Source: Oikopleura dioica
Taxonomy: Eukaryota > Animalia > Chordata
NCBI GenBank assembly: GCA_907165135.1
Contig: OU015568.1
Location: 7,564,001 to 7,628,000 of the forward strand
Length of the DNA: 64,000 nucleotides
Direction of reading: 5' to 3'
The translations under genes and the position numbers were made by a program. Under the pieces are notes generated by a model. The model did not search any database, was not told the DNA's origin, and worked only from the letters and a program-made list of their open reading frames with translations. Of this stretch, positions 37,004 to 40,000 are shown piece after piece; position 1 is the stretch's first letter; each line of letters starts with the position of its first letter.

Positions 37004-40000
37004 TTACTGGAGCGAGGCGTAATAGTCTTGAAGAACTTTCCAGGCTTTGGGGGCCATGAAACCAGTTGGAAGAGCACCTCCCTCTCGGGCGGTCTTTCGC
37101 ATGCGGGTTCCACTGAAGAGATACATTAGTTTTTGGTTTTTCTGGCGAAATTCTCACCTGATGAAGTCAAAGTTTTCGTGGTTGGAGGGATCATAGAAGT
37201 CCATAGCGCCCTTTTCTTTGTTGTAAGCGGCGACCTTGAAGGGGATGATCTCGAACTGTGGGATACCAGGGGCCATGGAGAGGACCTGAAACAAGCGAAT
37301 TTACAAAGAGCTTTGATGATTATCAAGTACCCGTCGGCCGTGAGAGTGATCATAGATGTCTTCCTTTCGGTCTGGGTGGCCCATACCAGCGGGATCTCGT
37401 CCGACAATGTAGAACTGGGCGCCAGTGACCAATCGAGCCTTGGCGTGCCATTGGACCTATAATTTCTATTAGAGACTGTATTTTTAGAGATATTATTACC
37501 TCAGTGGGACCGGCGTAGGACATGGGGGATGGCCAGATGGCAACAACGGTGGCTTCGGGGTCGAGAACCTTCTCCTCGAGGACGGCATCGTGCTGCTTCA
37601 TTCGCCATTCGAGTGGGACATCATCGGCCTTGGTCCAGCCTCCGAGAGGATGGAGGAGAAGGACTGGCTTCTTGTAACCTCGCTCCTTCAGCTTCTTAGC
37701 AGTATCGGTCATGAGGAGAGCGTGACCATTGTGAACTGGGTTTCGGAGCTGGAAGACGAAAACGGCATCGGCGCCGAGCTCTTCGAATCGGGCTCGGAGC
37801 TCGAGTGGGGTCTTTCGGTACTTGTCAAGACCGTCGTTCCAGGTGACTCGGTGAAGAGCTTCAAGATCACCACCGACGAGCCAGTCGCCCTGTTCGTAGA
37901 TCTTCTTGATGTGTGGGTGGTTGACGGTGTATGTTCCCCAGGTTCGGGCACATCGCTCTTCCTTTCGGTGAGTGTAGAATTCTGGGTCTCGGAGGATACC
38001 GTAGGTCTTGCCTTCGTAGGTGAGGGCGACGGCCTTGGCGTCCTTGTTGGCTTCTTTGATTTCGGTGGAGACGGCCAAGGTGATTGGGATAGACTGGTTG
38101 TAAGTCTCGCCGTTTTTGAACAAGCAGTTGAAGTGGAGAGACTACAACGATGAATAAATCGGATGTACACTTGATCGCAAATTACCTGGAGCATCTCATC
38201 CTCTCGCATGAAACCGTTGAGTGGAGTGGCCCATCCTTCGGAGAGGATCTGGAACCACTGGAGATCCATCTTGGTCATTTCGATCTTGGGGAGGGTCTCG
38301 GCCTCAGCGATCTTGGCGTCCTTCTCGTCGGCGCTGACGAAGAGTTCACGGACTTCTGGGGCAGCAGCCTTGGTTCCTTCAGATATCATTTAGATAATGT
38401 TTGATTGGGTTCACTCTTACCGGCAAGAACCTTGTTGTCTTGGAGGGTCTTGACGACCTTGGCGACGCAGGCGTCAATGCTGTCTTCGCCAGACTTGACG
38501 ACGCACTCTGGGTTGAGTGGGGGTTCATATGGAGAGTCGATTCCGGTGAATCCTAAACAGGAATTTAATTCAGATATCTACCGGCCGGACATTGTTGTTG
38601 GTCGTCAAACACCAGTAAGGCTGACATGCCCCCGGAGGGCAAAGTGAACCGGTAGTGTCGACCGAGCACCATTTTTGATTAAATTATGAATTCTTCGAAT
38701 CACCGAATTTCGAAATCATTTGGAAATCACCGTTTATATTTCGGATGGCCACAGCGCACGGCTAAAGTGAGCCCTTTGCCGTGCGCTGGGAGCACCCTTG
38801 TCTCGCTTCGCGCGTTTACCCTTAATGACTCCAGCTCGAGCCTTCTGGTAAAGACCCTTGACGTCTCGGTCTTCGCAGACAGAGAGTGGAGTGTCAATGT
38901 AACACTCAATAAAGGGGAGATCCGAGTTCTGATGAATACTTCGGGCGAAGTCTCGGTCCTGAAAATTAACCGGTTAGTAGGTCGCCGACCTCAACTGACC
39001 TTTGATCGCACCCGCTCGTGCTTTCTTGTACAGTCCCTTCGGATCGCGTGTTTCACTTCCACTTAGGTGGCAAAGATTTTCTTTTCAAGCTACAGTTTTG
39101 TTGGGTTAGCATTTCCTTTTTTGTTGTTGTGCATAAATCGCGAATCAGATTTGTTTGAATCAAAGTTGTTGAAATTTAAAGGATATTAGAGGCTAGGTAG
39201 TAATAATTATATGATAGCATTACTATTTGACACCTTAACAAACATCAAGCGGAGTGTTGATGTAGCATTCGACAAAGGGTAGGTCGGAGGTCTCGTGGAG
39301 AAAACGAGCCTCATCTCGATCCTAGGAAAGAGTAGAAGGATTAAGATGGAATTGGTATAATGGTAAATGATGGATAAGTGGTAAATGGCAACGATGACGA
39401 AAATTTTTCATAAAAACTTTATGAAAAATTTGTTAGAGAACAGAGCATGCCAAAAGTTGGTAAGTGAGATGAAGGTAAATGTGTTAATTCATGCACTACA
39501 GTTACTGTAACAACAAAACTTTTAAGTGAAACACCGAAATGTACAAGCAAAGAATCCATGCGATGGGCATGTGATGATATTCTTCAACACACACATGCGG
39601 ATACGAGCAAACGTACTATGCCTGGCCTCCCAACACAAACTTTCCCCTGATTTTACTATTTGCTCTGACCTTGAAATTTATTTAGAATTTTATGATTTCT
39701 TTGAAAAATTTTGGCTTGAATCCAAAAGCACTTATTTGATGTCTGAATTTAAAAATCAGAAGGCTGTATTTTTTTATTTGAAGAACGAAATTTGCAGTGA
39801 TTCTTGGCTTGGTGCCATAATTTCGCAAAATTTTTCGATCGACAGCTTTTTAAAATTTACGAGCTGTTGTTCAATGATCCATTTGCCCGTAATAACGGCA
39901 TGTCCGGTGAAAAAAATAGCGAAATCTAACTCTTTGGCTTTTGTGATTATTATGGCCCGGCTTGCTTTGGTTTATTTAAGGGTGTTTGTGTTGGGCACAC

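What the first reader, a model, noticed from the sequence alone, without database searches (positions are those of the whole stretch)
38820..39321. Duplicated, apparently mutually exclusive 139-nt cassette in the APS-kinase domain of PAPS synthase
Version 1 is exons 39239-39321 plus 39000-39055: [47 protein letters not shown]. Version 2 is exon 38820-38958: [47 protein letters not shown]. Both are 139 nt, phase 0 to phase 1, with conservative differences; including both or neither frameshifts. They are separated by a 41-nt intron with a perfect TACTAAC. The segment includes the RD[P/V]KGLY lid region, so one gene could make two kinetically different sulfate-activating enzymes. I know of no such switch in PAPSS.
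Basis: partly seen in the sequence, partly recalled or inferred. Interest (0 to 1): 0.85.

Follow-up and report, generated by a model that had tools for sequence, protein, structure and literature searches.

The report
Two swappable exons in PAPS synthase
The PAPS synthase gene of the planktonic tunicate Oikopleura dioica has two tandem 139-base versions of the exon that codes most of the kinase's active-site lid, each messenger RNA carries one or the other, so one gene makes two forms of the enzyme that feeds all sulfation, and the pair is kept in at least six related lineages and appears undescribed.

Summary
Confirmed. The window is Oikopleura dioica, Okinawa lineage: the annotated protein CAG5084093.1 matches its exons 100%. 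A PAPS synthase gene lies on the minus strand. Two homologous 139-nt cassettes sit in tandem: v1 at 39321-39239 plus 39055-39000, and v2 at 38958-38820. A 41-nt spacer separates them.

RNA reads from a diverged O. dioica lineage join v1b directly to the downstream exon, skipping v2 (8 reads). They join v2 to that exon in 14 reads, and 6 reads remove the odd intron inside v1.

Full-length mRNA contigs laid on the Bergen genome give both chains: up-v1a-v1b-down and up-v2-down. Isoform protein pairs are identical outside the cassette (559/559, 555/555, 562/562).

Both cassettes also stand in the genomes of two other appendicularians, and v1-type mRNAs occur in six lineages. The v1 cassettes form one clade (96/98). 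Synonymous sites are saturated while pN stays between 0.09 and 0.27.

The cassette holds the lid residues that correspond to Cys556, Arg559 and Lys562 of M. tuberculosis CysC.

Three things remain untested: a kinetic difference between the isoforms, where each is used, and how exclusion is enforced. v1 use in the window's own lineage is inferred, not seen. Public annotations hold only v2.

The parts
40122..40390 (-). Constitutive upstream exon: APS kinase P-loop, LDGD motif, ends ...SFISPLRK
   Evidence: Pfam APS_kinase, E 9e-40. Joined to v2 in the X43 contig, and to v1a in 2 X24 reads. 100% match to P0389.
39322..40121 (-). 800-nt intron between the upstream exon and v1a, with islands conserved between O. 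dioica lineages
   Evidence: The alignment to Bergen locus L007 is 57% identical overall with near-identical islands. The conserved complementary 12-mers are 39995-39984 and 39640-39629.
39239..39321 (-). Cassette v1, first part (v1a, 83 nt, 27 codons plus 2 bases)
   Evidence: Translation. 94% identical to L007. Present in mRNA contigs L013 and L014.
39056..39238 (-). Non-canonical 183-nt intron that splits v1, with short terminal inverted repeats
   Evidence: Removed exactly in 6 X24 reads from 5 starts. Its 159-nt Bergen counterpart is removed in L013 and L014. The same ends are present in L007. It is absent from L002, where v1 is one exon.
39000..39055 (-). Cassette v1, second part (v1b, 56 nt), coding E-T-R-D-P-K-G-L-Y... 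of the lid
   Evidence: 8 X24 reads from 7 starts join 39000 to 38552 and skip v2. 98% identical to L007.
38959..38999 (-). 41-nt spacer holding the v1b donor, a TACTAAC branch-point-like motif and the v2 acceptor
   Evidence: Sequence. The length is 41, 41 and 40 nt in L007, L001 and L002 although the L001 and L002 sequences are unrelated. No read joint removing it was listed.
38820..38958 (-). Cassette v2 (139 nt), the form in all public annotations
   Evidence: Matches human PAPSS1 residues 138-183, E 2.6e-14. Joined to both neighbouring exons in X43 contigs. 14 X24 reads join it to the downstream exon.
38553..38819 (-). 267-nt downstream intron, GC-rich, 72% conserved between lineages, with a hairpin
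38421..38552 (-). Constitutive downstream exon (G-F-T-G-I-D-S...: end of the lid and of the kinase domain)
   Evidence: Sequence and splice sites. Pfam APS_kinase C-terminal end. 100% match to P0389.

Best explanation
This is a pair of mutually exclusive exons made by an old tandem exon duplication inside the APS kinase domain of the bifunctional PAPS synthase of appendicularians. Each mature mRNA carries v1 or v2. Both cassettes together, or neither, would shift the frame, because 139 is not a multiple of 3. The gene therefore makes two full-length enzymes that differ only in 46 residues. These residues form the last core strand and about three quarters of the lid that closes over ATP and APS. 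The catalytic lid residues are the same in both cassettes: Cys at cassette position 28, Arg at 31 and Lys at 34. Three positions separate v1 from v2 in every lineage: position 4 (Glu versus Phe/Tyr), position 33 between the Arg and the Lys (Pro/Thr versus Val/Ile), and position 43 (Ala/Ser/Asn/Asp versus Val/Ile). Four things are shown: the architecture, the exclusive use, the conservation and the purifying selection. Three things are inferred. First, the two lids give the kinase different properties, such as affinity for or inhibition by APS, lid closure or stability. Second, the choice between them is regulated. Third, exclusion is enforced by the 40-41-nt spacer, whose donor lies only about 25 nt from the branch-point-like motif, with decay of frame-shifted RNA as a backstop.
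For: Architecture.

Reads: run X24 joins 39000 to 38552 in 8 reads from 7 starts, 38820 to 38552 in 14 reads, and v1a to v1b in 6 reads. An X43 contig at 317x depth joins 40122 to 38958.

mRNA contigs on Bergen genome locus L007: L013 and L014 carry up-v1a-v1b-down at 100% identity in v1. L008 carries up-v2-down.

Isoform protein pairs are identical outside the cassette: P0412/P0277 559/559, P0410/P0405 555/555, P0289/P0451 562/562, P0440/P0434 554/558.

Genomic conservation: both cassettes are present in L007, L001 and L002-L004.

v1-type mRNAs or fragments occur in clusters 2, 5, 7, 8 and 9.

Selection: pS is 0.55-1.0 (saturated) against pN of 0.09-0.27 in all cassette pairs, with no stop codon or indel in six genomic cassettes. 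Between the Okinawa and Bergen lineages v1a is 94%, v1b 98% and v2 91% identical, against 57-72% for introns. Seven v1 cassettes form one clade, support 96/98.

Lid mapping: the LDGD-to-Cys spacing is 79 residues both here and in M. tuberculosis CysC, whose lid is residues 552-581 (PMC4373884).
Against: v1 use in the window's own Okinawa lineage is not directly seen. The X24 reads are 90-95% alike, so they come from another lineage. The three RNA runs laid for v1 (X39, X42, X43) gave no spliced v1 form matching the window, and two v1-region contigs were not listed. All 13 full-length contigs of protein cluster 1, which holds the Okinawa-type protein P0389, carry v2. No enzyme data exist for either form. 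The spacer is only 2-4 nt shorter than this gene's working 43-45-nt introns, so a steric block is not proven. Depth was too low to exclude roughly 10% double inclusion. The intron inside v1 lacks GT..AG ends, which could make v1 use inefficient.
Confidence: 0.9

Rival explanations
1. Both isoforms are made, but they are functionally equivalent. The pair persists without any division of labour.
For: All known catalytic lid residues are identical in v1 and v2. No expression or enzyme data separate them.
Against: Three positions have stayed different between v1 and v2 in every lineage seen, while synonymous sites are saturated. The v1 cassettes form one old clade. A redundant exon that must be spliced through a non-canonical intron would be expected to decay.
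Confidence: 0.07
2. v1 is a decaying pseudo-exon whose occasional use is splicing noise.
For: Its internal intron lacks GT..AG ends. Annotations contain only v2.
Against: 36% of the X24 junction reads into the downstream exon come from v1b. Full-length v1 mRNAs exist in several runs and species. v1 is more conserved than v2 between O. dioica lineages. Its reading frame is intact in four genomes.
Confidence: 0.02
3. The two forms come from two paralogous genes, not from one gene by splicing.
For: None beyond the existence of two protein forms.
Against: Both cassettes lie 41 nt apart between the same flanking exons in four genomes. The isoforms are 100% identical outside the cassette. Both mRNA forms map to one locus.
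Confidence: 0.01

Closest known systems
Pyruvate kinase M exons 9/10 (PKM1/PKM2) of vertebrates (from my own knowledge)
   Same: A central metabolic enzyme in which two tandem, equal-length, homologous exons are used one at a time. They swap a short segment that changes regulation without touching the catalytic residues.
   Different: A different enzyme and a different fold. The PKM segment forms the allosteric and subunit interface, whereas this one is an active-site lid. PKM exon choice is known to be set by hnRNP and PTB proteins. Nothing is known here.
Vertebrate paralogues PAPSS1 and PAPSS2 (and the PAPSS2a/b splice forms)
   Same: Two versions of the same bifunctional enzyme in one animal. 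The literature reports that the APS kinase domain is only marginally stable and is stabilised by nucleotides (PMC8710738).
   Different: Vertebrates use two genes that differ along their whole length. Appendicularians use one gene and swap 46 residues. To my knowledge the PAPSS2a/b difference is a 5-residue insert in the sulfurylase part, not a cassette swap.
Alpha-tropomyosin exons 2/3 (steric exclusion by a branch point close to the upstream donor; from my own knowledge)
   Same: The donor of the first alternative exon lies very close to the branch point that serves the second exon. Here the distance is about 25 nt, within a 40-41-nt spacer of conserved length.
   Different: Appendicularian spliceosomes routinely remove 43-45-nt introns in this same gene. 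The margin is therefore only 2-4 nt, and the block is unproven.
Other mutually exclusive exon pairs noted by this scan in O. dioica (deoxynucleoside kinase, cadherin, TEP, laminin alpha)
   Same: Same genome, same type of tandem frame-locked exon pair, and some of them are also conserved in other appendicularians (AI notes, unchecked).
   Different: A different gene. Here one alternative exon has itself been split by a non-canonical intron in some species.

Membership tests
Mutually exclusive exon pair from tandem exon duplication | Two adjacent homologous exons of equal length and equal phases | tested here: met
   139 nt each, phase 0 to phase 1, 34/46 residues identical. The same holds in L001, L002 and L007.
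Mutually exclusive exon pair from tandem exon duplication | Mature mRNAs carry exactly one of the two | tested here: met
   Read joints that skip v2 or skip v1. mRNA contigs L013 and L014 (v1) and L008 (v2) mapped on L007. Isoform pairs identical outside the cassette. No contig or listed joint contains both.
Mutually exclusive exon pair from tandem exon duplication | Including both or neither destroys the reading frame | tested here: met
   139 is not divisible by 3.
Mutually exclusive exon pair from tandem exon duplication | Both copies kept by selection in related species | tested here: met
   Four genomes and six lineages with v1 mRNA. pN 0.09-0.27 against saturated pS. The v1 clade has 96/98 support.
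Steric-hindrance type of exclusion (alpha-tropomyosin type) | The donor-to-branch-point distance in the spacer is too short for the spacer to be spliced out | tested here: inconclusive
   The spacer is 41, 41, 41 and 40 nt in four genomes, and the donor lies about 25 nt from the TACTAAC motif. This gene's constitutive introns are 43-45 nt. The median O. dioica intron is 48-51 nt (PMC8008620). No spacer-removal joint reached the 3-read threshold.
Docking-site/selector RNA pairing type of exclusion (insect Dscam type) | Competing intronic base pairings conserved across species | tested here: not met
   Only two complementarities are shared by the two O. dioica lineages. None recurs at a like position in L001 or L002.
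Bifunctional PAPS synthase (APS kinase + ATP sulfurylase) | APS_kinase, PUA_2 and ATP-sulfurylase domains in one polypeptide | tested here: met
   Pfam hits on the exons. 602-609-aa mRNA-derived proteins carry all three domains.
Bifunctional PAPS synthase (APS kinase + ATP sulfurylase) | P-loop, LDGD motif and lid Cys/Arg/Lys present in the kinase domain | tested here: met
   Exon translations. Spacing identical to M. tuberculosis CysC (PMC4373884). Both cassettes keep Cys28, Arg31 and Lys34.
Canonical GT-AG intron (for the intron inside v1) | GT at the 5' end and AG at the 3' end | tested here: not met
   TT..AG, GT..AA or TA..GT in the window and in L007. AT..AC in L001 if the Cys codon is kept.

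The most novel reading that the evidence does not exclude
Appendicularians re-created the vertebrate PAPSS1/PAPSS2 division of labour inside one gene. The two lids would give kinases with different APS inhibition or stability, used in different cells, for example the house-secreting epithelium against the rest of the body. The spacer, fixed at 40-41 nt, would be a steric lock set just 2-4 nt below the smallest intron this spliceosome can remove. The parallel Tyr/His changes in both cassettes would show that both must fit the same partner surface.
Probability: 0.3. Interest if true: 0.7.

Novelty: new member of a known kind. Interest (0 to 1): 0.55.

Why it matters
PAPS is the only sulfate donor for all sulfotransferases. 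According to the literature read here (PMC8710738), the APS kinase step limits its supply and the kinase domain is only marginally stable. This gene offers a natural pair of enzymes that differ only around the lid. That makes it a clean system for asking what the lid contributes to substrate inhibition, closure and stability. It is also a clear case of alternative splicing doing what gene duplication does in vertebrates. The public O. dioica annotations seen here (CBY36991.1, CBY14199.1, CAG5084093.1) list only v2, so the v1 enzyme is missing from them. Finally, in some species one alternative exon is split by an intron with non-canonical ends and terminal inverted repeats, while in another species it is unsplit. 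This dates an intron gain inside a functional alternative exon.

Tried and rejected
- **Coordinate error of mine.** and the v2 row gave empty results because I cut the minus-strand reference at the wrong end and shifted the frame by one base. One search corrected this.
- **Repeats.** The repeat finder with a 9-nt seed saw no inverted repeat in the v1 intron. blastn found no second copy of that intron in the window. The short terminal repeat became clear only by comparison with L001 and L007.
- **RNA families.** Rfam found nothing above threshold in the introns. There were two sub-threshold hits only.
- **RNA duplex scan.** A duplex scan with shuffles timed out. An exact complement search replaced it and found nothing shared by all four genomes.
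- **Partner residue.** A search for a residue outside the cassette that follows the Tyr/His switch found none.
- **v1-like cassettes elsewhere.** A region search with the v1 cassette found only appendicularian v1 forms, a few other eukaryotic PAPS synthases with R-D-P-K-G-L-Y, and bacterial CysN/CysC. There is no sign that v1 came from elsewhere.
- **Literature.** The 2010 O. dioica genome paper is not held, so I could not cite the lower limit of intron size. Paper searches for an exclusive-exon switch in PAPS synthase found nothing relevant.
- **Mammalian proteins.** P0001 and P0008 looked like mammalian, possibly human, PAPSS1. I printed them once and did not compare, save or search them further.
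- **Not tested.** I did not test ascidians (Ciona), Fritillaria or salps for the second cassette. One Molgula cDNA protein (P0306) shows a single v2-like cassette.

Full report
**Observation.** The minus strand of the window carries a PAPS synthase gene.
- The exon at 40390-40122 hits Pfam APS_kinase (E 9e-40), and later exons hit PUA_2 and ATP-sulfurylase.
- After that exon come two homologous stretches: v1 in two pieces (39321-39239 and 39055-39000) and v2 (38958-38820).
- Each is 139 nt and runs from phase 0 to phase 1. They share 34 of 46 residues and 65% of bases, and 31 of their 48 differences are at third codon positions.
- A 41-nt GT..AG spacer containing TACTAAC separates them.
- The next exon is 38552-38421.
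The upstream donor, however, lies at 40121-40120. The 183-nt intron inside v1 is not GT..AG.

**Organism.** The NCBI protein CAG5084093.1 (P0389; O. dioica OKI2018_I69, chromosome PAR, g10544.t1) matches the window's exons at 100%. The window is therefore the Okinawa lineage of Oikopleura dioica. That annotation contains only v2, as do the two Bergen entries CBY36991.1 and CBY14199.1.

- In run X24 (raw oligo-dT RNA-seq labelled with the same species, reads 90-95% alike, hence another lineage), 14 reads join v2 to the downstream exon.
- 8 reads from 7 starts join v1b (39000) straight to the downstream exon and skip v2.
- 6 reads from 5 starts remove exactly the 183 nt inside v1, and 2 reads join the upstream exon to v1a.
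- A metatranscriptome contig of X43 at 317x depth joins the upstream exon to v2.
- No joint that removes the 41-nt spacer reached the 3-read listing threshold.
- Of the RNA runs found through 31-letter words of the v1 region, I laid X39, X42 and X43, and the contigs listed there were mostly unspliced. X42 also held a v1b-like piece joined to unlike sequence. They do not count as evidence of v1 use.

**RNA evidence from assemblies.**
- A profile search brought in full-length, mRNA-derived PAPS synthases of appendicularians.
- The 90% clusters of these proteins contain both forms.
- P0412 (v1) and P0277 (v2, CBY36991.1) are identical at 559 of 559 positions outside the cassette. The other pairs give 555/555 (P0410/P0405), 562/562 (P0289/P0451) and 554/558 (P0440/P0434).
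- I laid the mRNA contigs on the Bergen genome locus L007 (GCA_000209555.1). L013 and L014 read upstream exon, v1a, v1b, downstream exon, at 100% identity in v1. L008 reads upstream exon, v2, downstream exon.
- Fragments with v1 joined to the downstream exon occur in three further clusters.

**Conservation.**
- Three more genomic loci carry the pair.
- L007 (O. dioica, Bergen) has the same layout, the same odd intron ends and a 41-nt spacer.
- L001, a metagenome contig of a species about 80% identical in protein, has v1 split at the same codon by a 131-nt intron, a 41-nt spacer of unrelated sequence, then v2.
- L002-L004, a third species, have v1 as one uninterrupted 139-nt exon, a 40-nt spacer, then v2.
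- All cassettes are open.
- Across all cassette pairs pS is 0.55-1.0 (saturated) while pN is 0.09-0.27.
- Between the Okinawa and Bergen lineages v1a is 94%, v1b 98% and v2 91% identical. The upstream exon is 88% identical and introns are 57-72%.
- In a tree of the 47-residue cassettes, seven v1 sequences form one clade with 96/98 support, next to the appendicularian v2 sequences. This indicates a single duplication older than these lineages.
- Isoforms of several crustaceans, a snake and Saccoglossus differ elsewhere and share one cassette. Single proteins from a bryozoan and an echiuran also show one cassette.

**What the segment is.**
- v2 aligns to residues 138-183 of human PAPSS1 (1X6V), E 2.6e-14.
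- In M. tuberculosis CysC the lid is residues 552-581. Cys556 controls lid closure, Arg559 stacks on the ATP adenine and Lys562 touches the gamma-phosphate (PMC4373884).
- The distance from the LDGD motif to that Cys is 79 residues in both proteins. Cassette positions 28, 31 and 34 are therefore these three residues, and positions 24-46 form most of the lid.
- Both cassettes keep all three residues.
- Three positions separate v1 from v2 in every lineage: position 4 (Glu against Phe/Tyr), position 33 between the Arg and the Lys (Pro/Thr against Val/Ile), and position 43 (Ala/Ser/Asn/Asp against Val/Ile).

**How it most likely works.**
- It is shown that one gene gives two enzymes through exclusive choice of a lid cassette, and that both are under selection.
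- It is inferred that the lids differ in a kinetic or stability property. The APS kinase domain is reported to be marginally stable and stabilised by its nucleotides (PMC8710738).
- The way exclusion is enforced is also inferred. The frame rule makes any other combination useless.
- The spacer is held at 40-41 nt in four genomes, with the donor about 25 nt from the branch-point-like motif. The working short introns of this gene are 43-45 nt, and the median O. dioica intron is 48-51 nt (PMC8008620). A steric block is plausible but rests on a margin of 2-4 nt.
- I found no RNA pairing scheme shared by all species.

**Limits.** v1 splicing is shown in the Bergen-type lineage, the X24 lineage and other species, but not directly in the Okinawa lineage. 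No data show where or when each form is used. No enzyme measurements exist. Ascidians other than one Molgula cDNA, and Fritillaria, were not examined.

**Verdict.** This is a real, expressed, conserved and apparently undescribed pair of mutually exclusive exons in the catalytic lid of PAPS synthase. It is a new member of a well-known kind of mechanism, so its interest is moderate.

Noticed in passing
window 39056-39238; L007 6386-6544; L001 8525-8655; L002 8683-8821: The intron that splits v1 has non-canonical ends: TT..AG or GT..AA in both O. dioica lineages, and AT..AC in L001. It also has a conserved short terminal inverted repeat (AGGTG.CAAA ... TTTG.CACCT). Its interior varies between 183, 159 and 131 nt. 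A low-depth X43 contig lacks 150 nt of it. In L002 the exon is unsplit. This looks like an element-derived intron gained inside an alternative exon.
   Followed up: partly
window 39264-39262 and 39252-39250 (v1); 38901-38899 and 38889-38887 (v2); L007 counterparts: Cassette positions 20 (Tyr/His) and 24 (Pro/Ser) changed in parallel in v1 and v2 between the Okinawa and Bergen lineages. Position 20 agrees between v1 and v2 in 7 of 8 lineages. Neighbouring synonymous sites still differ between the cassettes, so this is parallel change rather than gene conversion. No partner residue was found.
   Followed up: partly
window 39534-39524 and 39058-39048; 39995-39984 and 39640-39629: There are two intronic complementarities whose arms are both exact in the Bergen locus. 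An 11-mer about 200 nt upstream of v1a pairs with the v1b acceptor junction. A 12-mer pair lies within the upstream intron. By chance about 0.3 such 11-mers are expected in this stretch, so conservation is the only argument for them.
   Followed up: partly
window 38553-38819: The intron after v2 is GC-rich and far better conserved between O. dioica lineages (72%) than the upstream intron (57%). It has long near-identical blocks and a hairpin at 38743-38797. No Rfam family matched.
   Followed up: partly
window 40626-40817: The OKI2018 model P0389 is 622 aa with a longer N-terminus, whereas most mRNA-derived proteins are 601-606 aa. Their first coding exon maps to about 40703-40626. The annotated start may be over-extended.
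   Followed up: no
window 37279-37325 and 38379-38434: Two joints in the read table look non-canonical (GA..TC, and CA..TT with 10 extra letters). These are alignment effects of reads from a diverged lineage. The sequence itself gives a GT..AG intron at 38420-38377 (44 nt). By eye, a 6-nt shift gives a GT..AG reading for the other joint.
   Followed up: partly
proteins P0001 and P0008: Two database proteins returned by the representative search look like mis-spliced mammalian, possibly human, PAPSS1. I printed them once and then left them alone.
   Followed up: no
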